Shown: positions 64 to 14,941 of the stretch, in pieces
Layout of the letters: every line of letters begins with the position of its first letter
Position numbering within the stretch: the first letter of the stretch is position 1
NCBI RefSeq assembly: GCF_000315625.1
Contig: NW_005434622.1
Location: forward strand, 309,057 to 342,146
Length of the DNA stretch: 33,090 bases
Direction: 5' to 3'
Origin: Guillardia theta CCMP2712
Lineage: Eukaryota; Protista; Cryptophyta
Translations under genes and position numbers: made by a program
The notes under the pieces: generated by a model
What the model was told of the DNA's origin: nothing
The model's database searches: none
What the model saw: only the letters and a program-made list of their open reading frames with translations

Positions 64-2834
64 ATCACTCAACGGCTCGCCAAGCTTCTTCTTCCTTCCT
101 ATCTTCCAATTAACAAGCCTCCGCCCGAGCAGCTGGCTCGAATCCTTGCTCTCATCAAGCAGAACTCTGCGGTACCCCTCCTCCCTCCTCCCTCCTCCCT
201 CCTCTCTCCTCCTTCCTCCTCCTCCTCCTCTCATCCTTCCCCTCTGTTCCTGTGGTTGTCGCTGAGTATCTCCTCCAGGCTGCTCAAGTCTTCTTCAAGC
301 AGGCTGGCTCGCAGGCCCCCGAGCAAACTTGCGTCAACGTCCTCGTGGCTCTCCATCACGCGCTGCTGGTGTACGCGGGCAGCAAGAAGAAGGTCAGCAA
401 GACCAACCCCAAGAAGAGCAAGAGAGGCGGCGAGTCGCGATCGAAGCGCCAGCAGCAGGAAGAGGAGGAGGAGCATCAAGAGGACGAGGAGGACGGAGAC
501 GTCGAGAGCTTCGGCAGCATCGCAGAGGTCAGCGTCCAGTGCATGTCCAGCATGCTCGAGACGCTGCGGGCGAGGCTGGACTCCTCCTCCTGCTTCAACA
601 TCCGCTCCTACCTCGTGGAGAACATCTCCTCCTCCGGCCTCGCGTCCCTCGCCTCGTCCTTCTCCTCCTCCTCCGGCATGGCGAGCGCCCTTTGGAAACT
701 CGCGGCGCTCATGCCGGAGCCCGGGGACAAGAAGCTGGTACAGGAGTGTCTTGCCCGGGCCCGCACGCTGCCCCTGGAGGAGGCGGCGCCGCTGCTGGAC
801 TGCGTGTTCCACTGGTCGGGGCAGAAGGAGTTTGTGAGGGAGGCCTGTGCTGAGCTGCGGTCGGCCGTTTCGCAGGAGGAGGGGAGGGGAGGAGGGAAGA
901 CGGGAGGGAAGAGGAGGAAGACTGGAGGAAAGTCCAGCGCGCAGGAGGAGGAGGAGGAGGAGGAGGAGGGGAGCTCGCCCCGCCCTCTCTCCCTCCTCCT
1001 GCAGCAGCTGCAGTACGTGCTTGACTCGGATCATCTCCGTCAGAAACTCATGCTGGTCCCCTCCCACCTCGAGGAGATGCTGGAGAGCCTTGAGGGAGCT
1101 TTGCAGCTGGTTGAGGCGAGGATGGAGGAGGAGGAGGAGGAGGAGGACGGGAAGATATCAGCGGAGGATCTCAAGAGCATGGTCAACATTTATGCAAAAC
1201 TCTGCCTCCACAGCCACTGTGCTCAGGTACCTTGTGAACCCTGCTTTCCTCTTGCCCTTTCCCCTCCCCTTCTCCCCTCCTCACTTTTCTCTTTCCCATT
1301 CTCATGTCTCTCATTCGTCCTCCCCCCCCTCTTTCTCCTCTCTTCATCCTCCTCCCTCCTCTCATTCCCCGGCAGTTCCCAGGAGCAGGAGGAGCCGGCA
1401 AGTCCTCGGGTCGCCTGCTCTCTCTCCTAGGATGGAGCAACTTGACCTGCCTGCCGGTCCTCCTTGCACCGCAGGAGGAGAAGCAGAGGAAGAGCAAGAA
1501 GAAGGCCGACGCCAAGGCCCAGGAAGGAGGAGGAGAGCGCAGGGAGCTCGCGAGGAGGAGCGTCATGATCTCCCTGATGGTGGCAACGGAGAGTGCCGTC
1601 CTCGGCCGTATCAACGATGCGCTTGCTGCTGCTGTTGCCAACCTGTGCTCGGACGTAAGCTGAGCCCTGGAGGAGAGGGAGGGAGGGGAAGGAGGGAGAG
1701 GAGAGCAGGAGCAGTGAGAACAAGGAAGGTGACATACGTTGCAGGTGCTGGACAAGAGAGGAGGAGCATGCGTCCTCAAGGAGGGGCTGCTGGGGATGGT
1801 GTGCAAGGCGATCTTTCAGCTGACTCGTGAGCCCAACCTTCCCCCTCCTCCTCTTTCCGCTTCGTCTATCTCTCCACTCTCACCTCCCGCCCTTTGAACC
1901 TCACCCCCCTCTTCTCCGCTAAGAGGTCACGGCAGGCTCTGGCCTCCAGCAGGACAAGCTCCAAGAGCTCTTCTCCTCTCTGATCCTCCTCGTCCCCATT
2001 GACAGACTGAGGACGGTAGGCAGGACATCAGCGTGTTGCTTGAAGACTGACAGAGAGCAGGTGACGATGCTGCTGCGAGATTCCCTCGGCCTCTGCTGCA
2101 AGGCCGGCAGCTCCTCCTCCTCGCTTTCCGGGAAGATCTTCTCTTCCTTCCTCCTCAAGCTTCAAGGTCAACACCCTCCTGCTCCTGCACCCCCTCTTGA
2201 CGTCAGCAGCAGAGTTCGAGGAGGAGAGCGACATTCAAGTCGTCATCAGCAGCCTCCTGTCTGCTGTGAAGCAAGCAGGAGGGAACGCGAGCAGAGCGCT
2301 GGTTGACGAGCTGCTCCGCGTGTTCTCCTCGTCGGATCTCACAAACATCGAGGCTGCTCTCCAACTGCTCCAGGTCAGCTCCCCCCCGCCCTCCTCCCTC
2401 GACTTGTTGGCCTTCTTTACCCTTCCCCGTCCTGTTCTCCTGTTTTCTTGCCACTGCCCTCCTCCTGAGACTTCCTCCCCTCCCCTCCTCTCTTCTCCCC
2501 TCCTCTCTTCTCCCCTCCTCTCTTCTCCCCTCCTCTACCCAACCACCTTCCTTCCTGTTCATCTCCTCACTTGCCGCAGGCTGCCAGCCGAGACAAAGTC
2601 CTGCGCGTCAAGGATCAGACGTCTGACAAGTTGACCCGAGCGTGCAGAGATGGCGTGGAGATGCTGGTGAAGAGACTCGACGAGCGACCTGGAGAGTATG
2701 AGGAGGGGAGGAAGAAGCGCGACCCGAGAGACGTGGTGGAGATTGCCGAGGGATGGCTGCAGGCAGAGGAAGTGGCAGGAGCTGAAGGAGCGGGAGCGGG
2801 AGCAGCGGGAAAGAAGGCAGAGGAAAGCAATTGA
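64..2834 (+). CDS. NCAPG2: Condensin-II complex subunit G2 (CAP-G2), 3' portion; multi-exon, starts upstream of the window
   Basis: GT-AG exons approx. 64-171, 279-1226, 1376-1654, 1745-1826, several short exons 1924-2373, and 2580-2834 (TGA) stay in frame. The spliced peptide (QRLAKLLLPSYLPINKPPPEQLARILALIKQNSA-AAQVFF..., ALWKLAALMP, LLDCVFHWSGQ, LQYVLDSDHLRQKL, IYAKLCLH) is collinear with recalled NCAPG2 blocks (NSFLPVNQP...MNHAAARRFY, LFMLMSFMP, LLDCLCSWGQ, IEYLLTHPKNRECL, LHCRLSIH). Confidence 0.85.
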
Positions 2835-2998
2835 GTCGGTTTTAATCTTTGTACAGTAGTGTGAGACACGTTGGTTAATCATTAAAGAATGAAAAGAATA
2901 CACAAGACAAGGAGGACAAGTCAACGATGCAGAGAGAGACAAAACAGAGACAAACACGTTCTGACATGGCATGTAAGACACACAGTCATAACCATGTG

Positions 2999-4070
2999 TC
3001 ACTTGCGGTAGATCTTGTTGACGAGCTTGTCCTTGAGAGATGATGTAGCGTTCTTGACCTTGCCTATCAGCCCTACCTGCTCCTCCTTCACCTCCTCCAC
3101 AGGCATCAGCAGGCGTATCCCCAGCAGGACGCCGGTAAGGTGCAGAACCATCTCGAAGAGGAAGATGAGGACTCGGTGCCAGTATAGCCACCCTTGCTCG
3201 AGCACAAAGACGATGTGCACGAAAGGTATTAGAGCCAAGACCTGGCAAGGAAGAGTGAGCAAGTGGAGGGGGAAGGGGGAAGGGGAGGAAGAGAGGAGGA
3301 AGAGGGGAGTCAGATGGACATGAGTGTTGGTGGATAGTGAAGGGGGGGAGGGGAAGAAAGAGAGATGGTATGTGAACGAGAAAGGAGAGAAAGACAACTC
3401 TTACAAACTGCACAAGGCTGATGCCGATGAAGATCTGCCATTCACTCATGTCATGACCACCAGGGAGCAAGTGAAAGGTCGACCTGGATGCCTCGCTTCC
3501 ACTTGAAGTAGATGGCGATGAAAACAACGAGGAAGCCCAGGAGCGCGAAGGGGAGGATGAGGAACAGGATGGCAGAGAAGTAGTTGAGGGAGACAGAGAT
3601 AAGCTGCGACAGGACGAGCGTGAGCAGATATGTACGCAGCGGAGAAGAGAGGGGTCACTACGTCAAACAAAAGAGAAGCAAGGTGAGGGGCGAGTGATGG
3701 ATATGAATGGGCTAGATGCAGACAAGGTGCATGACGTGTTCATCGGGATGAGAAAGACGAGATGAGCATCACGTCACTCGCATAGGAAAGAAGGAGAGTC
3801 CAAGGAGAAGGGAGGAGCAACGGAGCAGGAAGGAGGGAAGGGCAGTGTAGAATAGAATGAGATTAGAGAAAGGGAAGGAGGAAGCAGGAGGAGCAGAAGT
3901 AACAGGATGATCAGGATGATCAGAAGGAGCAGGAGGAGCAGGAGGAGCAGGAGGAGCAGGAGGACGAGCAGGAGGAGCAGCATGATCAGGAGGAGGAGCA
4001 GCATGAGTTTGTGCATTGCCTGCAACAGCGCCAGCGCCCCCAACATAAGCCGAAGCTTCGCATCCTCCAT
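2999..4070 (-). CDS. Small (~147 aa) four-helix membrane protein of unknown function
   Basis: Exons 4070-4020, 3603-3484, 3434-3405 and 3241-2999 join in phase 0: MEDAKLRLMLGALALLQ/LISVSLNYFSAILFLILPFALLGFLVVFIAIYFKWKRGIQ/IFIGISLVQF/VLALIPFVH...KIYRK*. There are four hydrophobic segments. The first intron needs a GC donor. Confidence 0.7.
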
Positions 4071-4220
4071 GACCCTTTTAGCTCCGAGACCTCATCCCCC
4101 CATTGACCATGTTCTCAAGCCGGACCCGCCCCAGGGGCCCGCCCTGCAAATTGGCTACCACATCCCCCCTCAACCCGCCCTGCACCGCTGAAGCAGCCAG
4201 TGAAGCAGCAGCGCAAGGCC

Positions 4221-6266
4221 ATGGACGACGGGGACTCGGAGATGGAGGAGATGGAGGAGATGGAGGAGATGGAGGAGGACGTCGGAGAGTACGTCGACAG
4301 TGACATGGAAGAAGATGAAGCGAACCAGACCGCCAACGCTGCTGCCGGGCTGCTGGGCTGGTTCATGGACTCGGACTCGTCTGACAACATGTCAGACGCT
4401 GACGACTCGGACTCGGACATCCCAAGAGAGGAGCGAGTGAACGTGTCCAAGCTGTTCGAGGACATACACCCACTGCCATTCCCGGTCTTCAAGATCATTG
4501 GCGACGGGATGATGAGCATACCCACCAAGGACTTCATCGCCGCCCGCGTCTTCCTCATCCTCTGCTGGAACCTGATGAGCCGCACAAGGAACTCCAACAA
4601 CATCGAGTTTGGGCATCTCAGCTGGAAGGACGACCACCTGTGTGTGATGTTCGACAACAAGAGGATCACCAACCCCGCGCGGAAGCCCGAGAAACTCAGG
4701 AGGGTCTTTGCCAACCCGAAGATGCCTGAGATCTGTCCCATCTTGGCGCTGGGGATTTACCTTCTCAGCATCGAGCAGGATGCCAAGAGGCTGTTTCCTC
4801 CTCCTCCCTTGCACAAGAAGTTCTGGAGGATCTTGAGGGACATTCTCAGGCCAGCAGGACAGAGCTCATCGCACAGTGAGAGGCACAAAACTGTTGACCT
4901 CACCAAGACAAGGGAGCTAGTAGCCAAGGAGCTGCAAGCGAAAGGCATCCGCACTAGCACTCTCGGCAGCGACAGCATACAGAAAGGTGCTGTAGTCTAC
5001 TGCGTTTCTTTCAACTTCCGGGAAGCACAGAATATCCCTCTTCCCGACGATGCATACTCTAGACGGCCCGCGCCCACCCCTGAATGGAATGAGCCAGACA
5101 ATGGCGATGCGTTTGTTGGAAGGACAGCAGTAGGGTTGCCTCTCAACACAGCTGAGTTTGCTCGCCTCCCTCCCCACTTCCGGGAGAATGATGAGATAGT
5201 GGAGCAGGTGGTTCAGAAGTTGTTCCCCCGGCGCTCACCTGCATTAGGCAAGGTGATACAGCACTGCCTGGCATCCGTGGTCTACCAGCTAGACTACCTC
5301 AAGACCAAACTTGATCCTCAACATCCTCTCTGGAAGTCGAGGCTGTTTGAGGACGAGGAGGTTCTGCAGGCCCTAAAGTCTCGAGTGATATGCTGCCTTC
5401 CGAACGAAACCATGTTCATGGTCGCCACGGGGGTCCCTCCAGCAGTCACTCAATTCCTGTACAATCAGAGGCTGATCGGGGACAGAGAGCGTTTCCACAC
5501 TGAGTTGATGAAGGATACCAAGGGCCTTGGTGGCCAACCGCCCAGCTCTTCTTCTGCTGCCAAGAATGTTTCAGAGCCGGAACAGGTCCCTGCAGGCTCC
5601 AAGAGGATGGGCGCGAGCACTCTCAAGGATATTTACAGTGAGTGTGTCAGCGAGTTGATGGAAAAGCGTGCTAGTATGCCGTCACTAGAAACAAAGGCTG
5701 ACGTGCGGAGTGCTCCGGACCTCACATCGGGACTGCCTGCCTATGAGAGATTTAGAACCTTGACATCGTGCATTGACGAGGTGCTGCTCAATCCCTCCGT
5801 GGAGTTTTCTGTGCCAGCTACCTTTCCCTTGGAGAAGCGAGTCACCAGCTGTGAAATTGCATGGAAACTTTGGTTTTGTGGAGACAATGGTTGTCGTCCC
5901 TTGATGCATGTCAAGGTTATGGAAGTTAATAGGCTGCAGGACAGGCGAATCCTCGGCTACATCAGGACCTTTGTGAGGGCCTTCTACGGGCATATCTTGT
6001 GTCACCATGCTGACAAGTACGATCAACCCGAGGTCAAGAGGAGGATGTCTAACATGATTGCTGAATTCGGAGAATCTCCAAAGTTAGAGACCGTCAAGAT
6101 CCTCTTCGCTGAATTCTATGACAGCTTCTACACATGGCTCCTGGCTGATGCTCCTGATGAGTTGCGCGCTCAAACCTTGAAGTTCAGTCAGCTGATGAAG
6201 CTGCTGCAGAAGAAGGTCTGCGGAGGCTTTCCGGGTTTCCAGGTCGTGACTCAGGACCGTCGGTAG
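4221..6266 (+). CDS. Crypton (CryptonS-like) tyrosine-recombinase-derived protein with degenerate catalytic motifs; probably domesticated
   Basis: Uninterrupted 681-codon ORF from ATG 4221. It carries Crypton YR hallmarks: WNLMSR, HLSWKDDHLCVMF, RRVFANPKMPEICPILALGIY, LGSDSIQKGA (vs GTHSIRKGA), GDAFVGRTAVGLP, FARLPPHF, LASVVYQ, HPLW, ATGVPP, and C-terminal VPATF...AWKLWFCG...PL. It also has an acidic N-terminal extension. Confidence 0.8.
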   Translation: MDDGDSEMEEMEEMEEMEEDVGEYVDSDMEEDEANQTANAAAGLLGWFMDSDSSDNMSDADDSDSDIPREERVNVSKLFEDIHPLPFPVFKIIGDGMMSIPTKDFIAARVFLILCWNLMSRTRNSNNIEFGHLSWKDDHLCVMFDNKRITNPARKPEKLRRVFANPKMPEICPILALGIYLLSIEQDAKRLFPPPPLHKKFWRILRDILRPAGQSSSHSERHKTVDLTKTRELVAKELQAKGIRTSTLGSDSIQKGAVVYCVSFNFREAQNIPLPDDAYSRRPAPTPEWNEPDNGDAFVGRTAVGLPLNTAEFARLPPHFRENDEIVEQVVQKLFPRRSPALGKVIQHCLASVVYQLDYLKTKLDPQHPLWKSRLFEDEEVLQALKSRVICCLPNETMFMVATGVPPAVTQFLYNQRLIGDRERFHTELMKDTKGLGGQPPSSSSAAKNVSEPEQVPAGSKRMGASTLKDIYSECVSELMEKRASMPSLETKADVRSAPDLTSGLPAYERFRTLTSCIDEVLLNPSVEFSVPATFPLEKRVTSCEIAWKLWFCGDNGCRPLMHVKVMEVNRLQDRRILGYIRTFVRAFYGHILCHHADKYDQPEVKRRMSNMIAEFGESPKLETVKILFAEFYDSFYTWLLADAPDELRAQTLKFSQLMKLLQKKVCGGFPGFQVVTQDRR

Positions 6267-7014
6267 CTGCATGCGCTCATCGACACTGTACGAATAGAAT
6301 GCAGGCTTTCGAAACGATCACAAGTGAATCGCCGGGGCAGCTCAGTGGCCGCTGAGACGATCAGCCGGGCAATCAAGGTGCAGCTGGCCGCCACCAGGTT
6401 ATCGTAGCGCTGCGCTAGTTACCTCCACGTTATTGACTAGCAAAGTGCCAAATTTGCAAGCTTCATGCTACGAATGTTTTCGCTCCCCGCAATGTCGTCG
6501 CTCTTATGATTTGGTGGTGTCTCCTCTTGACCACGAGAAGCACTTTCAGTGTAGACAACATTGTCCCCATGCAAGAAGAACGATGAATCTGAATCCCCTT
6601 CCCCTGTGACCATCGATTGCAACTTCGGTGAACACGTCCACAGCCTTGTGCAGTTCACTTTGTAGCAGATCCTTTCTCAAGACCATTTGGTATCTGCGGA
6701 ACTTCTTTCCGGTTGCTCCAGAAGTGAGTCAGCACACATAAATCACCTTCTCAGTGCAAAACTGCACCAGTTGGCGACAGCCCGTTGCATCACGCAGAAT
6801 AAAGATACGAATCACTAAGGATTAGTATTTCATATCAAACACTTCCTTCAATACATGGATTATGTGTTGCCTGCTCTCAAGGTGCTTGAGAAGGGAATTT
6901 TACGGTATGCTCTTCTCGCCCAGTACTCCTGCATGACCTCACGCAACTAGCCCCAGCATGTCAACGTCATCGACTCTTGTGATTGACCTCGTTCTGATTT
7001 TTGACTGACAAGTA

Positions 7015-7556
7015 GGCTACCGAGTCTAACGGCTGACATCCATAAAAGACCCAAGACTCAGTGGACGACACGGGTAAAGTTGCCTCGCTACCATCTCCGA
7101 AAAGACCTCTTTTCAGCTCAAAACCTCTTCACATCTCCTCCGCCTGGGCGCAGTTGGACCCTCTTGACCCCAGCCCACCCCTGGATGTGAGCTTCCCTCC
7201 TCCTCCTCTGACGCTGCTCTTGTCAGATCGAGAAGGACACAGGAGCCAAGCTTCAGCTGATTGAGGAAGGCAACACCTCCTTCCTGCAGGTAGTTCTCAG
7301 CTGAACACTAGCTGGGGTCTTGTGTCGCCTCTGACAAGCTGGGCAGATTTCCGGGACTAACAGCCAGCGACGAGAGGCGCTCAAGATTGTTCGCTCACAC
7401 CTCGACCGGCAGGTTGAGGAGGAGGAGGAGGAGGTGCCGGTCGAGGAGGAGGAAGATGAGGACGAGGAAGAGGAAGAGGAGAGCGAGGGGGAGGAGGGGG
7501 AGGAGGTGCCGGTCGAGGAGGAGGAAGATGAGGAAGAGGAACAGAAAAGGAAGGGG
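7015..7556 (+). CDS. Exons of a protein with a degenerate KH-like segment and an acidic tail; start unresolved, runs into the gap
   Basis: Exons 7015-7073, 7154-7186, 7227-7289 and 7347-gap join in frame: ...LDPSPPLD/IEKDTGAKLQLIEEGNTSFLQ/ISGTNSQRREALKIVRSHL, resembling the second half of a type-I KH fold. This is followed by poly-Glu with a duplicated EEVPVEEEEDE unit. Confidence 0.5.
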
Positions 7557-7656
7557 NNNNNNNNNNNNNNNNNNNNNNNNNNNNNNNNNNNNNNNNNNNN
7601 NNNNNNNNNNNNNNNNNNNNNNNNNNNNNNNNNNNNNNNNNNNNNNNNNNNNNNNN
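7557..7656. other. Assembly gap (100 N)
   Basis: Run of N flanked by purine-rich and pyrimidine-rich low-complexity sequence. Confidence 0.99.
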
Positions 7657-13826: not shown

Positions 13827-14941
13827 TCATTTCCCCCTCTTCGCATCGTACTTGGCATACGCATACAGAGCTGCTCCTGCTGTTGACACTCCGATCCCCA
13901 CGAAGCCCTCCTCCACAAAGTTCACCTTGCCGAACCACAAGAAGCCGATCCACGTCTGCACGAGCCCCTTCAGCTGCCCCATCACCGACAGCGTCAGCCC
14001 AGAGCAGCGGCTGGTGAGCACGGTAGCAGCGAAGAGGAAGACAGCGCTGAGGAGCGAGAAGAGAGCAAGGGAGGAGAGGAACCAGGGCTTCTGCCATGCA
14101 GCATGATGCACGAGGCCGCGATCGAAGATGAAGGTCCCCACGAGGAGGGGGGCTGTGGTGATGATGCTGTTGAAGTAGTTGAGCTCTACCTCGGAGAAAC
14201 CGGCGTCGTTGAAGTGAGAGACGCTGATGAGGTAGAGCGCCTGCGTTGCGCTCGCAGCGAAGCCAACAGCATAGGAGGAGAACTTGAAGTCCATGTCTCC
14301 CCTCGCCACCATGAGGGGCCCAGCCAGGAGGAGGAAGACCGCGCAAATGACCATGGCAGACTGCCGCTTGCCTCGCAGGAGGAAGTCGAAGACGAGGACG
14401 TAGATCGGAGTCAGGCGCTTGATGCTCGTGTAGGCGGGGATGGTGAGCAGGCGGACGGCGAGGAGGCCCGTGGTGACGTTGAGGAGGTAGAAGCAGGAGA
14501 GAGGAACGAGCTTCCTGAGAGCATGCAGAGAGAAGGTCGGGGTGATGGGGAAGACTTGCACCAGGAAGATGGTGGTGAGGGCCTGGAGGAGGAGGAGGAA
14601 GGAGGTGAAGGAGAAGTCGAAGTTGCTCACGACCAGCTTGTTGGTTGCGACCATGGCGATGGAGGTGGTGCAGTAGAAAACAGCATAGACGAGCGAGAGG
14701 ATCGCCTGAGGAGTGCCGGTCTTGTCTGAGCTCCTCTCTGTTTCGCTGTGAAGATGAACAACTTGGACATGCTGCGCTTCATGGTTGCCCTGCTCATCGT
14801 CATCCTTAGTATGTCCTCCTCCTCCACCTCCTCCTCCTTCCTCCTCCTCCTCCTCCTCCCTCCTCCTCCTCCTCCCTCCTCCTCCTCCTCCTCCTCCTCC
14901 CATGAAAGTCCCGAAAGGACATCACCTTACCTCATGAACAT
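13827..14941 (-). CDS. Nucleotide-sugar transporter, SLC35D/GONST-like (DMT/TPT superfamily)
   Basis: Micro-exon 14941-14931 (MFM) plus exon 14745-13827. Motifs YCTTSIAMVATNKLVVS, LLLLQAL, LTIPAYTSIKRLTP, ELNYFNS, CSGLTLSVMGQLK, GAALYAYAK; about 10 TM helices. Confidence 0.9.

What the first reader, a model, noticed from the sequence alone, without database searches (positions are those of the whole stretch)
4221..6266. Catalytically dead, apparently domesticated CryptonS-type tyrosine recombinase gene
Seen: an intact 681-codon ORF with the full Crypton YR scaffold and C-terminal WxLWFxG domain. The first catalytic Arg is kept (LMSR, 4581), but H-x-x-R reads D-S-I-Q (4971-4982). The segment that normally carries RxGW and the nucleophilic Tyr before GDxFVGR is replaced by unrelated Pro-rich sequence. 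An acidic N-terminal tail is added, and a host gene starts only 150 bp upstream, leaving no room for an element end. Known: Cryptons gave rise to host genes in animals (ZMYM2-4, QRICH1, KCTD1, KIAA1958) and yeasts (Gcr1, Msn1, Hot1, Ndc10/Cbf2), and CryptonS occurs in oomycetes and diatoms. Inference: an independent domestication in this algal lineage as a DNA-binding or chromatin/transcription factor. Loss of catalytic residues without stops or frameshifts suggests purifying selection.
Basis: partly seen in the sequence, partly recalled or inferred. Interest (0 to 1): 0.82.

Follow-up and report, generated by a model that had tools for sequence, protein, structure and literature searches.

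The report
Domesticated dead Crypton recombinase gene
A single-copy, expressed, intron-free gene in a cryptophyte alga is a former Crypton transposon recombinase that lost its catalytic residues before two algal genera split, making it a new but unsurprising case of a host gene made from a transposon.

Summary
Window 4221-6266 (+) is an intact 681-codon ORF. No Pfam, NCBIfam or PDB sequence search recognises it. Its predicted structure has a tyrosine-recombinase (YR) catalytic fold, closest to yeast Ndc10 (Z 14.5) and Flp (13.8). It belongs to a very large family of ~700-aa proteins (11,224 cluster representatives). Of 183 members examined, 160 keep the full R-K-H-R-W-Y set with Cre-like spacing.

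The window protein keeps Arg-I. It reads D-S-I-Q at H-x-x-R, has unrelated Pro-rich sequence where LRAGW and the Tyr lie, and has an acidic tail in place of the N-terminal core-binding domain. A Hanusia phi transcript protein (50% identical, full length) shares the identical GSDSIQKG, the missing W/Y segment and the acidic MSDADDSDSD motif, so inactivation predates their split.

DNA contig depth equals the flanks, indicating a single copy. RNA-type assemblies carry an unspliced 2.26-kb transcript between spliced host genes. A divergent host gene starts 150 bp upstream. There are no TATGG termini.

An ordinary neighbour gene is 90% identical to its Hanusia counterpart, so this gene evolves fast, or the Hanusia protein is a paralogue. 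Domestication is well supported. A DNA- or chromatin-binding role is inferred only. dN/dS and assignment to the CryptonS group could not be tested. First-stage notes report other Crypton-like genes elsewhere in this genome.

The parts
4221..6266 (+). Intact intron-free CDS (681 codons plus stop) of the Crypton-derived gene
   Evidence: ORF list. Unspliced RNA-type contigs cover 4248-6508 and 4248-6516.
4192..6516 (+). Approximate transcribed span. The 5' limit is uncertain because a GAG/ATG repeat breaks the assemblies. The 3' end lies about 240-250 nt after the stop.
   Evidence: Contig ends and the drop in depth in runs X2 and X3; loose end at 4192 in X2.
4221..4460 (+). Acidic, disordered N-terminal tail (res 1-80) that stands where intact relatives have the core-binding domain. 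It includes the conserved W-F...MSDADDSDSD motif.
   Evidence: Net charge -28, pI 4.05. pLDDT about 42-57. Res 46-80 are 57% identical to P0001, with MSDADDSDSD identical. The core-binding domain is absent in alignment A1.
4461..5540 (+). Tyrosine-recombinase catalytic-domain fold plus the conserved post-Tyr region (res 81-440)
   Evidence: VIA-align Z 14.5 to 3sqi_A Ndc10 (model 84-391), 13.8 to Flp, about 11 to Cre. pLDDT is mostly above 90. Net charge +10, pI 9.3.
4581..4583 (+). Arg-I (R121 of WNLMSR), retained
   Evidence: Column is R in 180/183 family members.
4971..4982 (+). Former H-x-x-R box, now D-S-I-Q (res 251-254)
   Evidence: Family consensus is GTHSxRKG. The window and Hanusia P0001 both read GSDSIQKG.
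5022..5102 (+). Pro-rich replacement (res 268-294) of the LRAGW...DxY segment that carries the Trp and the nucleophilic Tyr
   Evidence: Alignments A1 and A2. pLDDT<50. 29% identity to P0001.
5103..5123 (+). GDAFVGR, the start of the most conserved block (res 295-440, 68% identical to P0001)
5541..5807 (+). Poorly conserved, largely disordered linker (res 441-529)
   Evidence: 25% identity to P0001. Low pLDDT.
5808..6236 (+). Family-specific helical C-terminal domain (res 530-672) with AWKLWFCG at 5859-5882
   Evidence: Domain model (res 526-672) has pLDDT 91.9. No solved-structure match, best Z 4.4. Atlas TM 0.71 to an oomycete cluster and 0.53 to an oomycete cluster partly marked GCR1_C. pI 9.0.
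4020..4079 (-). First exon of the divergently transcribed, spliced host gene (ATG at 4070). It leaves 150 bp between the two start codons.
   Evidence: RNA contig 9 of X2 with joints 4020>3603, 3484>3434 and 3403>3239; sequence.

Best explanation
This is a host gene made from a Crypton-family tyrosine-recombinase transposon gene. The source belongs to the stramenopile-type ('CryptonS-like') group.

Shown:
- The protein keeps the YR catalytic-domain fold, the conserved post-Tyr region and the family's C-terminal helical domain.
- It has lost the His and Arg-II of H-x-x-R and the Trp/Tyr segment, so it cannot carry out the phosphoryl-transfer chemistry of a YR.
- It has exchanged the N-terminal core-binding domain for a strongly acidic tail.
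- These changes were already present in the common ancestor shared with a Hanusia phi gene.
- Since then the reading frame has stayed open in both lineages, and the folded parts have been conserved better than the linkers.
- The gene is single-copy, has host-like composition, sits 150 bp from a divergent host gene, and is transcribed as an unspliced mRNA.

Inferred:
- It acts without catalysis, as a nucleic-acid- or chromatin-binding adaptor or regulator.
- The basic YR core and basic C-terminal domain would provide DNA binding and/or multimerisation surfaces.
- The conserved acidic-aromatic, Ser/Asp-rich tail would act as an effector module: a transactivation-like, histone/partner-binding or auto-inhibitory module.
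For: Fold: the top Foldseek rows are all YR-fold proteins. VIA-align gives Z 14.5 to Ndc10, 13.8 to Flp, about 11 to Cre and 8.4 to lambda Int over model residues about 80-390.

Family: 45 relatives came from the word search and 11,224 representatives from full HMMER. 160/183 have R-K-H-R-W-Y. The spacing is R to K about 27, Arg-II to W 23 and W to Y 9, as in Cre (the Cre numbering is from my own knowledge).

Dead site shared with Hanusia P0001: identical GSDSIQKG, no W/Y segment, and a conserved acidic motif. The clade (window, P0001) has support 1.0 and is nested in the intact family.

Selection:
- Identity is 56-68% in folded parts against 25-29% in the loop and linker.
- Neutral simulation to about 50% identity gives about 15 stop codons, and 0/200 replicates stay open.

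Single copy and expression: DNA contig depth is 60.3 against 62.7 in the flank. Unspliced RNA contigs cover 4248-6508/6516 at depth 220.8 and 23.9. The neighbouring genes are spliced and the intergenic DNA has zero depth. 15 runs hold at least half of the gene's words.

No element ends.

Charge layout: core +10, C-domain pI 9.0, tail -28.
Against: - No dN/dS could be computed, because no Hanusia nucleotide sequence was available.
- A neighbouring TPT transporter gene is 90% identical to its Hanusia orthologue, while this gene is only 50% identical. Either constraint is weak or diversifying over much of the protein, or P0001 is a paralogue and not the orthologue.
- The core-binding domain, which in YRs and Ndc10 forms half of the DNA clamp, is absent. 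DNA binding is therefore not assured.
- No DNA-binding, localisation or phenotype data exist.
- Copy number rests on one DNA run's contigs, which may be the source of the assembly itself.
- Other Crypton-like genes are noted elsewhere in this genome but were not examined.
Confidence: 0.72

Rival explanations
1. It is domesticated, but as a regulator or inhibitor of mobile Cryptons and not as a general transcription or chromatin factor. A catalytically dead subunit that keeps the multimerisation surfaces (the post-Tyr region) and perhaps end recognition would poison the recombinase tetramer or occupy element ends. This would be analogous to truncated transposase inhibitors such as the Tn5 inhibitor protein or the P-element KP repressor.
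For: - The most conserved block is the post-Tyr region (68% identity). In YRs the sequence after the Tyr mediates subunit contacts (established knowledge for Cre and Flp).
- The N-terminal DNA-clamp domain is lost.
- Divergence is fast relative to an ordinary gene (50% against 90%), and the stem branch is long (1.13), as expected in a conflict.
- A first-stage note reports a Crypton with an intact catalytic set in the same genome (unverified).
Against: There is no direct evidence. Active Cryptons in this genome were not examined here, and their relation to this protein is unknown. The window clade is about 30% identical to intact family members, which may be too far for heteromer formation. 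Fast evolution can also be simple relaxation.
Confidence: 0.17
2. It is an inactive, decaying transposon copy that happens to be transcribed, with no host function.
For: Catalytic residues are lost. It has no introns, like its transposon relatives. There is high divergence from the Hanusia protein.
Against: - A 681-codon frame is open here and a 689-residue frame in Hanusia, despite about 50% divergence. Neutral simulation never keeps the frame open (0/200).
- Conservation is uneven and follows the fold.
- The dead-site motif and the acidic motif are identical in both species.
- It is single-copy with no element ends, and is packed between expressed host genes.
Confidence: 0.06
3. It is a still-active, non-canonical recombinase or topoisomerase-like enzyme that uses substitute residues, for example Tyr279.
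For: Arg-I is kept. A Tyr (Y279) lies in the replaced segment, and one alignment puts it in the nucleophile column.
Against: His and Arg-II are replaced by Asp and Gln, and the Trp is gone. The Lys column holds Arg. Y279 corresponds to Leu or Gln in Hanusia P0001 and lies in a pLDDT<50 segment. Arg-II is essential in all studied YRs (established knowledge). The gene is single-copy with no ends.
Confidence: 0.02
4. The gene derives from the tyrosine recombinase of a polinton-like virus or virophage integrated in cryptophyte genomes, not from a Crypton.
For: Cryptophyte polinton-like viruses often encode a YR (PMC12220804).
Against: - The relatives are ~700-aa proteins with a core-binding domain, YR domain and the family C-terminal domain. 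Most sit on 2-3-kb contigs, and some are in diatom chromosomes.
- The best solved-structure matches are Ndc10 and Flp.
- The nearest Atlas clusters are diatom and oomycete proteins, some marked NDC10_II, GCR1_C or DUF3504.
- There are no viral genes beside it.
Confidence: 0.03

Closest known systems
CryptonS elements of oomycetes and diatoms (Kojima & Jurka 2011, PMC3212892)
   Same: It has a YR domain followed by a conserved C-terminal region that Pfam does not score as GCR1_C. Its sequence relatives include diatom (Nitzschia) genes, and the nearest Atlas clusters are oomycete and diatom proteins.
   Different: It is single-copy, has no TATGG or other terminal direct repeats, has a dead catalytic site, lacks the core-binding domain and has gained an acidic tail. 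The host is a cryptophyte, not a stramenopile. No Repbase CryptonS sequence was available for a direct comparison.
Ndc10/Cbf2 and Gcr1 of budding yeasts (CryptonF-derived host genes)
   Same: Ndc10 is the best structural match (3sqi_A Z 14.5, 4aco 13.8). Like this gene, they are YR-fold proteins without a preserved catalytic site, retained as host genes (PMC3212892).
   Different: Ndc10 keeps both lobes of the DNA clamp and has further domains. Sequence identity is about 11-12%. No Pfam NDC10_II or GCR1_C hit was found. This is an independent event in a different eukaryotic supergroup.
DUF3504 genes of animals (KCTD1, KIAA1958, ZMYM2-4, QRICH1, WOC)
   Same: They are Crypton YR-derived domains that lost the Tyr and Arg-II, and mostly the His, yet are conserved and expressed (PMC3212892). 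The same residues are lost here.
   Different: They derive from CryptonA and are fused to other host domains (zinc fingers, BTB) in intron-containing genes. This gene is a stand-alone, intron-free ORF with no DUF3504 Pfam hit.
Flp and Cre site-specific recombinases
   Same: The catalytic-domain fold is the same (Z 13.8 and about 11). In intact family members the spacing of the R-K-H-R-W-Y residues is the same as in Cre (Cre numbering from my own knowledge).
   Different: The window protein lacks four or five of the six active-site residues and the N-terminal domain.

Membership tests
Tyrosine recombinase superfamily (fold) | Catalytic-domain fold shared with Cre, Flp, lambda Int and topoisomerase IB | tested here: met
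   VIA-align Z 14.5 (Ndc10), 13.8 (Flp), 11.4 (Cre), 10.6 (XerH), 8.4 (lambda Int), with 145-237 residues aligned. The top Foldseek rows are all YR-fold.
Tyrosine recombinase superfamily (enzyme) | Active-site residues R-K-H-R-(H/W)-Y | tested here: not met
   Only Arg-I is kept. H-x-x-R reads D-S-I-Q, the Lys column holds Arg, and the W/Y segment is replaced. It therefore has the fold and ancestry of the family but is not an enzyme of it.
Crypton-family YR proteins (homology) | Significant sequence similarity to a multi-copy eukaryotic family of stand-alone YR proteins with an intact active site | tested here: met
   E-values are 1e-50 to 1e-20 to ~700-aa relatives. The family has 11,224 representatives, and 160/183 have an intact hexad. 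The window protein is nested in the family tree. That this family equals Repbase 'Crypton' is inferred from the Ndc10/Flp fold match and from Atlas clusters marked NDC10_II, GCR1_C or DUF3504.
CryptonS group | Clusters with Repbase CryptonS YR sequences in a phylogeny | not testable with these tools
   No Repbase sequences were available. Only indirect support exists: diatom relatives and oomycete and diatom Atlas clusters.
CryptonS group | No GCR1_C domain, but a C-terminal region conserved within the group (PMC3212892) | tested here: met
   No Pfam hit in the window protein or 14 relatives. The C-terminal W..W.CG...P.R.L domain is conserved in 35 members and folds confidently. There is a weak shape resemblance (TM 0.53) to a cluster partly marked GCR1_C.
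CryptonS group (as a mobile element) | 5-6-bp terminal direct repeats, mostly TATGG, and multiple copies | tested here: not met
   There is no TATGG in the flanks and no flanking direct repeat of 8 bp or more. Contig depth is single-copy. This is expected for a domesticated derivative. An attempt to define the ends of the diatom relatives gave nothing.
Domesticated transposon gene | Single copy, no element ends, in a host-gene context | tested here: met
   The divergent spliced host gene starts 150 bp upstream.
Domesticated transposon gene | Counterpart in a related species with the same derived state | tested here: met
   Hanusia phi P0001: 50% identity, 99% coverage, the same GSDSIQKG and the same acidic motif. 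Orthology versus old paralogy is not resolved, and synteny is not testable.
Domesticated transposon gene | Purifying selection (dN/dS<1) | tested here: inconclusive
   No nucleotide sequence of the counterpart was available. The proxies are positive: an open frame against about 15 expected stops, and conservation that follows the fold. However, divergence is far above that of a neighbour gene.
Domesticated transposon gene | Expression | tested here: met
   Unspliced contigs span the whole ORF in RNA-type assemblies X2 and X3. Their RNA nature is shown by the spliced neighbours and the empty intergenic DNA. 15 runs hold at least half of the gene's words. The raw RNA run X23 was sampled too thinly to add anything.

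The most novel reading that the evidence does not exclude
Cryptophytes may carry a small, fast-evolving family of exapted dead Crypton recombinases: this gene, its Hanusia counterpart, the Hanusia paralogue P0002 that keeps H-x-x-R but lacks W and Y, and possibly the other loci noted in this genome. These would act as dominant-negative or end-binding inhibitors of active Cryptons. That would be a transposon-derived anti-transposon defence based on a tyrosine recombinase.
Probability: 0.15. Interest if true: 0.72.

Novelty: new member of a known kind. Interest (0 to 1): 0.5.

Why it matters
Crypton domestication is documented in animals (the DUF3504 genes) and budding yeasts (Ndc10, Gcr1, Msn1/Hot1). 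This would be an independent case in a cryptophyte alga, a different eukaryotic supergroup, and from the stramenopile-type Crypton group. My literature searches found no report of a domesticated gene from that group.

It shows the same convergent pattern as the known cases: the His, Arg-II and Tyr are lost while the fold is kept. It also adds a different remodelling, with the core-binding lobe swapped for a conserved acidic tail.

It gives a concrete, expressed, single-copy candidate for asking what a dead YR fold is reused for in protists. Because intact Cryptons reportedly coexist in the same genome, it also allows a test of whether such genes regulate their mobile relatives.

Tried and rejected
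- Pfam, NCBIfam and PDB sequence searches with the single protein, with a 15-sequence set and with profiles found nothing meaningful. The family link had to come from fold and feature searches.
- A second word-index search with the profile added almost nothing new.
- Exact-sequence look-ups for the window protein and for Hanusia P0001 found no encoding contig, so no codon alignment or dN/dS was possible.
- The C-terminal domain has no solved-structure match (best Z 4.4). A GCR1_C relationship is only hinted at (TM 0.53).
- I tried to define the ends of intact diatom relatives to test for TATGG termini. The Nitzschia loci were fetched, but no long direct repeat was found between the two neighbouring genes in L002, so I dropped this line.
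- The 30-nt loose ends seen in RNA contigs at 4192 and 7226 are not present in the window and remain unexplained.
- The raw RNA-seq run X23 gave too few reads over the gene (about 6% of the run was read) to show transcript ends or strand.
- tblastn of the protein against the window found no second copy.
- A look-up of earlier findings by sequence was blank.
Full report
**1. What is in the sequence**

The + strand carries one long ORF from 4200 (GTG) or 4221 (first ATG) to 6266, which is 681 codons from the ATG. The in-frame stop upstream is at 4104.

- R121 of WNLMSR lies at 4581-4583.
- D-S-I-Q (res 251-254) lies at 4971-4982.

No second copy exists in the 33-kb window (tblastn). Pfam, NCBIfam and PDB sequence searches, with the single protein or with profiles, return nothing meaningful. 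The 'Crypton' label therefore could not be taken from a family scan and had to be tested in other ways.

**2. Family and fold**

The word-index search found 45 relatives:
- Best: a Hanusia phi (cryptophyte) transcriptome protein, P0001, at 50% identity over 99% of the query.
- Next: a second Hanusia protein, P0002, at 30%.
- Then: diatom (Nitzschia inconspicua) genes and many ~700-aa proteins on 2-3-kb metagenomic contigs, at 22-34%.

A full HMMER search with the family profile found 11,224 cluster representatives at E<=1e-3 and 2,941 at E<=1e-30. That abundance is what one expects of a mobile-element protein.

An AlphaFold2 model built on the 45-sequence alignment has mean pLDDT 77.8. Residues about 80-265, 293-440 and 530-670 are confident.
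- The top Foldseek rows are all tyrosine-recombinase-fold proteins, with weak E-values.
- VIA-align gives Z 14.5 to the Ndc10 DNA-binding domain (3sqi_A: 220 residues aligned, rmsd 3.8, model 84-391). It gives 13.8 to Flp, about 11 to Cre, 10.6 to XerH and 8.4 to lambda integrase.
- Language-model features and shape searches in the ESM Atlas point to oomycete and diatom clusters. Some of these carry NDC10_II, GCR1_C or DUF3504 marks.

The YR-fold claim is therefore confirmed. The closest solved structure is a protein that Kojima & Jurka (PMC3212892) derive from a Crypton.

**3. The active site**

Intact family members show WNLMSR, H-M-K-N-D-Q, G-T-H-S-x-R-K-G, L-R-A-G-W and D-x-Y, followed by A-G-D-x-x-V-G-R. 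The spacing is Arg-I to Lys about 27, Arg-II to Trp 23 and Trp to Tyr 9. This equals that of Cre (R173, K201, H289, R292, W315, Y324; from my own knowledge).

In a census of 183 sequences, 160 have R-K-H-R-W-Y and most of the rest have only W to Q or H.

The window protein differs as follows:
- It keeps Arg-I.
- It has Arg in the Lys column, with a Lys one residue earlier.
- It reads Asp and Gln for the His and Arg-II.
- Between Q254 and G295 it has 41 residues of Pro-rich sequence unrelated to the 42 residues of the family. This segment is modelled at pLDDT<50.

One caveat applies. A large MAFFT alignment puts Tyr279 of that segment in the nucleophile column. In the pairwise alignment the Hanusia counterpart has Leu there, and in the MAFFT alignment Gln. 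This Tyr is therefore not a conserved nucleophile.

The ~190-aa N-terminal core-binding domain of the relatives is also missing. An acidic tail stands in its place.

**4. Evidence that it is a host gene and not a dying element**

*(a) Shared derived state.* P0001 has the identical GSDSIQKG, lacks the W/Y segment and lacks the core-binding domain. It also has the same acidic W-F...MSDADDSDSD motif. The two form a clade with support 1.0. P0002 is their sister (1.0), and the group is nested inside the intact family on a long stem. Inactivation therefore predates the split of the two genes.

*(b) Open frames.* Both frames are open over 681 and 689 residues. Neutral simulation of this ORF to about 50% amino-acid identity gives about 15 stop codons, and none of 200 replicates stays open.

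*(c) Conservation follows the fold.*

| Region (residues) | Identity to P0001 |
|---|---|
| First 45 residues of the tail | 27% |
| Motif part of the tail (46-80) | 57% |
| YR core (81-270) | 56% |
| Former active-site loop (271-294) | 29% |
| Post-Tyr block (295-440) | 68% |
| Linker (441-529) | 25% |
| C-terminal domain (530-670) | 50% |

(All values.)

*(d) Copy number.* In the DNA run, the contig covering 4250-7192 has depth 60.3 and the flank contig has 62.7. A single contig runs from the gene into 900 bp of unique downstream sequence. This run may be the source of the assembly, so the evidence is internal to it and not independent.

*(e) Expression.* Two assemblies (X2, X3) carry unspliced contigs covering 4248-6508 and 4248-6516, at depth 220.8 and 23.9. 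They are RNA assemblies for two reasons. They skip GT..AG introns in the neighbouring genes (7290-7346 on the + strand, and three introns of the minus-strand gene upstream). They also have no depth over the intergenic 6700-7027, where the DNA run stays at 60. Fifteen runs hold at least half of the gene's words.

*(f) Context.* The spliced minus-strand gene has its first exon at 4020-4079 with the ATG at 4070, 150 bp from ATG 4221. There is no TATGG in the flanks and no flanking direct repeat of 8 bp or more. GC3 is 0.68, between two host genes at 0.62 and 0.77.

**5. A caution about rate**

A neighbouring single-exon TPT-family transporter gene (13827-14903, minus strand) is 90% identical to its Hanusia phi orthologue. 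This shows that the window comes from a close relative of Hanusia. It is probably Guillardia, but that name is my inference. It also shows that the Crypton-derived gene has diverged about five times more at the protein level.

Two readings are possible:
- It evolves fast, through relaxed constraint outside the core or through diversifying selection.
- P0001 is a paralogue, and the true orthologue was not sampled in the transcriptome.

Either way, the shared derived features show that a dead ancestor gave rise to two long-lived expressed genes. A formal dN/dS was not possible, because no encoding contig is on record for P0001.

**6. How it probably works**

What is shown is that YR chemistry is impossible. 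Arg-II and the His are gone, the Trp/Tyr segment is replaced, and the N-terminal lobe of the clamp is lost.

What remains is:
- A basic YR core (net +10, pI 9.3, more basic than intact relatives at -1 to +5).
- A very well conserved post-Tyr region.
- A basic helical C-terminal domain (pI 9.0).
- A strongly acidic tail (net -28) with a conserved aromatic-acidic, Ser/Asp-rich motif.

The C-terminal domain folds confidently (pLDDT 91.9). It has no solved-structure counterpart (best Z 4.4). It matches an oomycete Atlas cluster at TM 0.71 and a cluster partly marked GCR1_C at TM 0.53.

My best reading is a non-catalytic DNA- or chromatin-binding adaptor or regulator. The acidic tail would be an effector or auto-inhibitory module. 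This would work like Ndc10/Gcr1 or the DUF3504 proteins without being a member of those families. This step is inference.

The main alternative mechanism is a dominant-negative or end-binding inhibitor of active Cryptons. It is suggested by three things: retention of the likely multimerisation region, loss of the DNA-clamp lobe, and fast evolution. A first-stage note also reports an intact Crypton elsewhere in this genome (not verified here).

**7. Comparison with the known and novelty**

Kojima & Jurka define CryptonS as follows (PMC3212892):
- Found in oomycete and diatom hosts.
- No GCR1_C domain, but a conserved C-terminal region.
- 5-6-bp terminal direct repeats, mostly TATGG.

The architecture and the taxa of the relatives fit this definition. 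The terminal repeats are absent, as expected after domestication. A phylogeny with Repbase CryptonS sequences could not be made, so 'CryptonS-type' remains plausible but unproven.

Domesticated Cryptons are known in animals and yeasts and lose the same residues. My literature searches found no report of one in cryptophytes or from the CryptonS group. I therefore rate this a new member of a known kind. The case is solid, but the biological role is open.

**8. Limits**

- Copy number comes from the contigs of one DNA run.
- The 5' end of the transcript is unresolved. A repeat breaks the assemblies at about 4248, and a single-contig loose end at 4192 is unexplained.
- The organism's name is inferred.
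- Other Crypton-like loci in this genome are known only from unverified first-stage notes.

Noticed in passing
window 4192 (run X2): One RNA-type contig matches from 4192 rightwards. Before that point it carries at least 255 letters that are not in the window (the last 30 were tested). Read in frame, they would add M-E-D-G-A-L-E-E upstream of the ORF. This could be a distant 5' exon or an assembly chimera through the GGAGGA-type repeat.
   Followed up: partly
window 7226-7406 and the N run at 7557-7656: A highly expressed spliced transcript contig (depth 1256 in X2, 341 in X3) enters the window at 7226. About 1.4 kb of its 5' sequence is absent from 2600-7225, and the 30 nt next to the joint are absent from the whole window. 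Either the 5' exons are far away, in which case the Crypton-derived gene would lie inside a long intron, or the assembly is misjoined near the gap.
   Followed up: partly
window 3912-4075: A purine-rich (AGGAGC/AGGAGG)n low-complexity tract has an enormous summed depth in all runs (about 100,000 in the DNA contigs), so it is a genome-wide simple repeat. Most of it lies inside the first intron (3604-4019, GC..AG on the minus strand) of the upstream gene.
   Followed up: no
window 2835-4079, minus strand: The upstream host gene is spliced with short introns (49 nt and 163 nt, GT..AG) and one 416-nt GC..AG intron. Its exon 1 encodes M-E-D-A-K-L-R-L....
   Followed up: no
P0002 (Hanusia phi): This Hanusia paralogue (30% identity) keeps Arg-I and H-x-x-R but has Met and Glu at the Trp and Tyr columns. 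It is sister to the window/P0001 pair. It may be a second, differently degraded exapted Crypton gene.
   Followed up: partly
L001 6001-8224 (Nitzschia inconspicua, P0004): This diatom family member reads D for the His and H for the Tyr (R-K-D-R-W-H). It sits among ordinary genes (UbiA, aldehyde dehydrogenase), so it may be another inactivated or domesticated copy in a diatom.
   Followed up: no
window 13827-14903, minus strand: A single-exon TPT-family (solute carrier 35-like) transporter gene is 90% identical to a Hanusia phi protein. It was used here as a divergence yardstick.
   Followed up: yes
run X16 (freshwater metagenome): A 2023 freshwater metagenome holds 48% of the gene's sampled words, which suggests the same or a very close organism is in that sample.
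   Followed up: no
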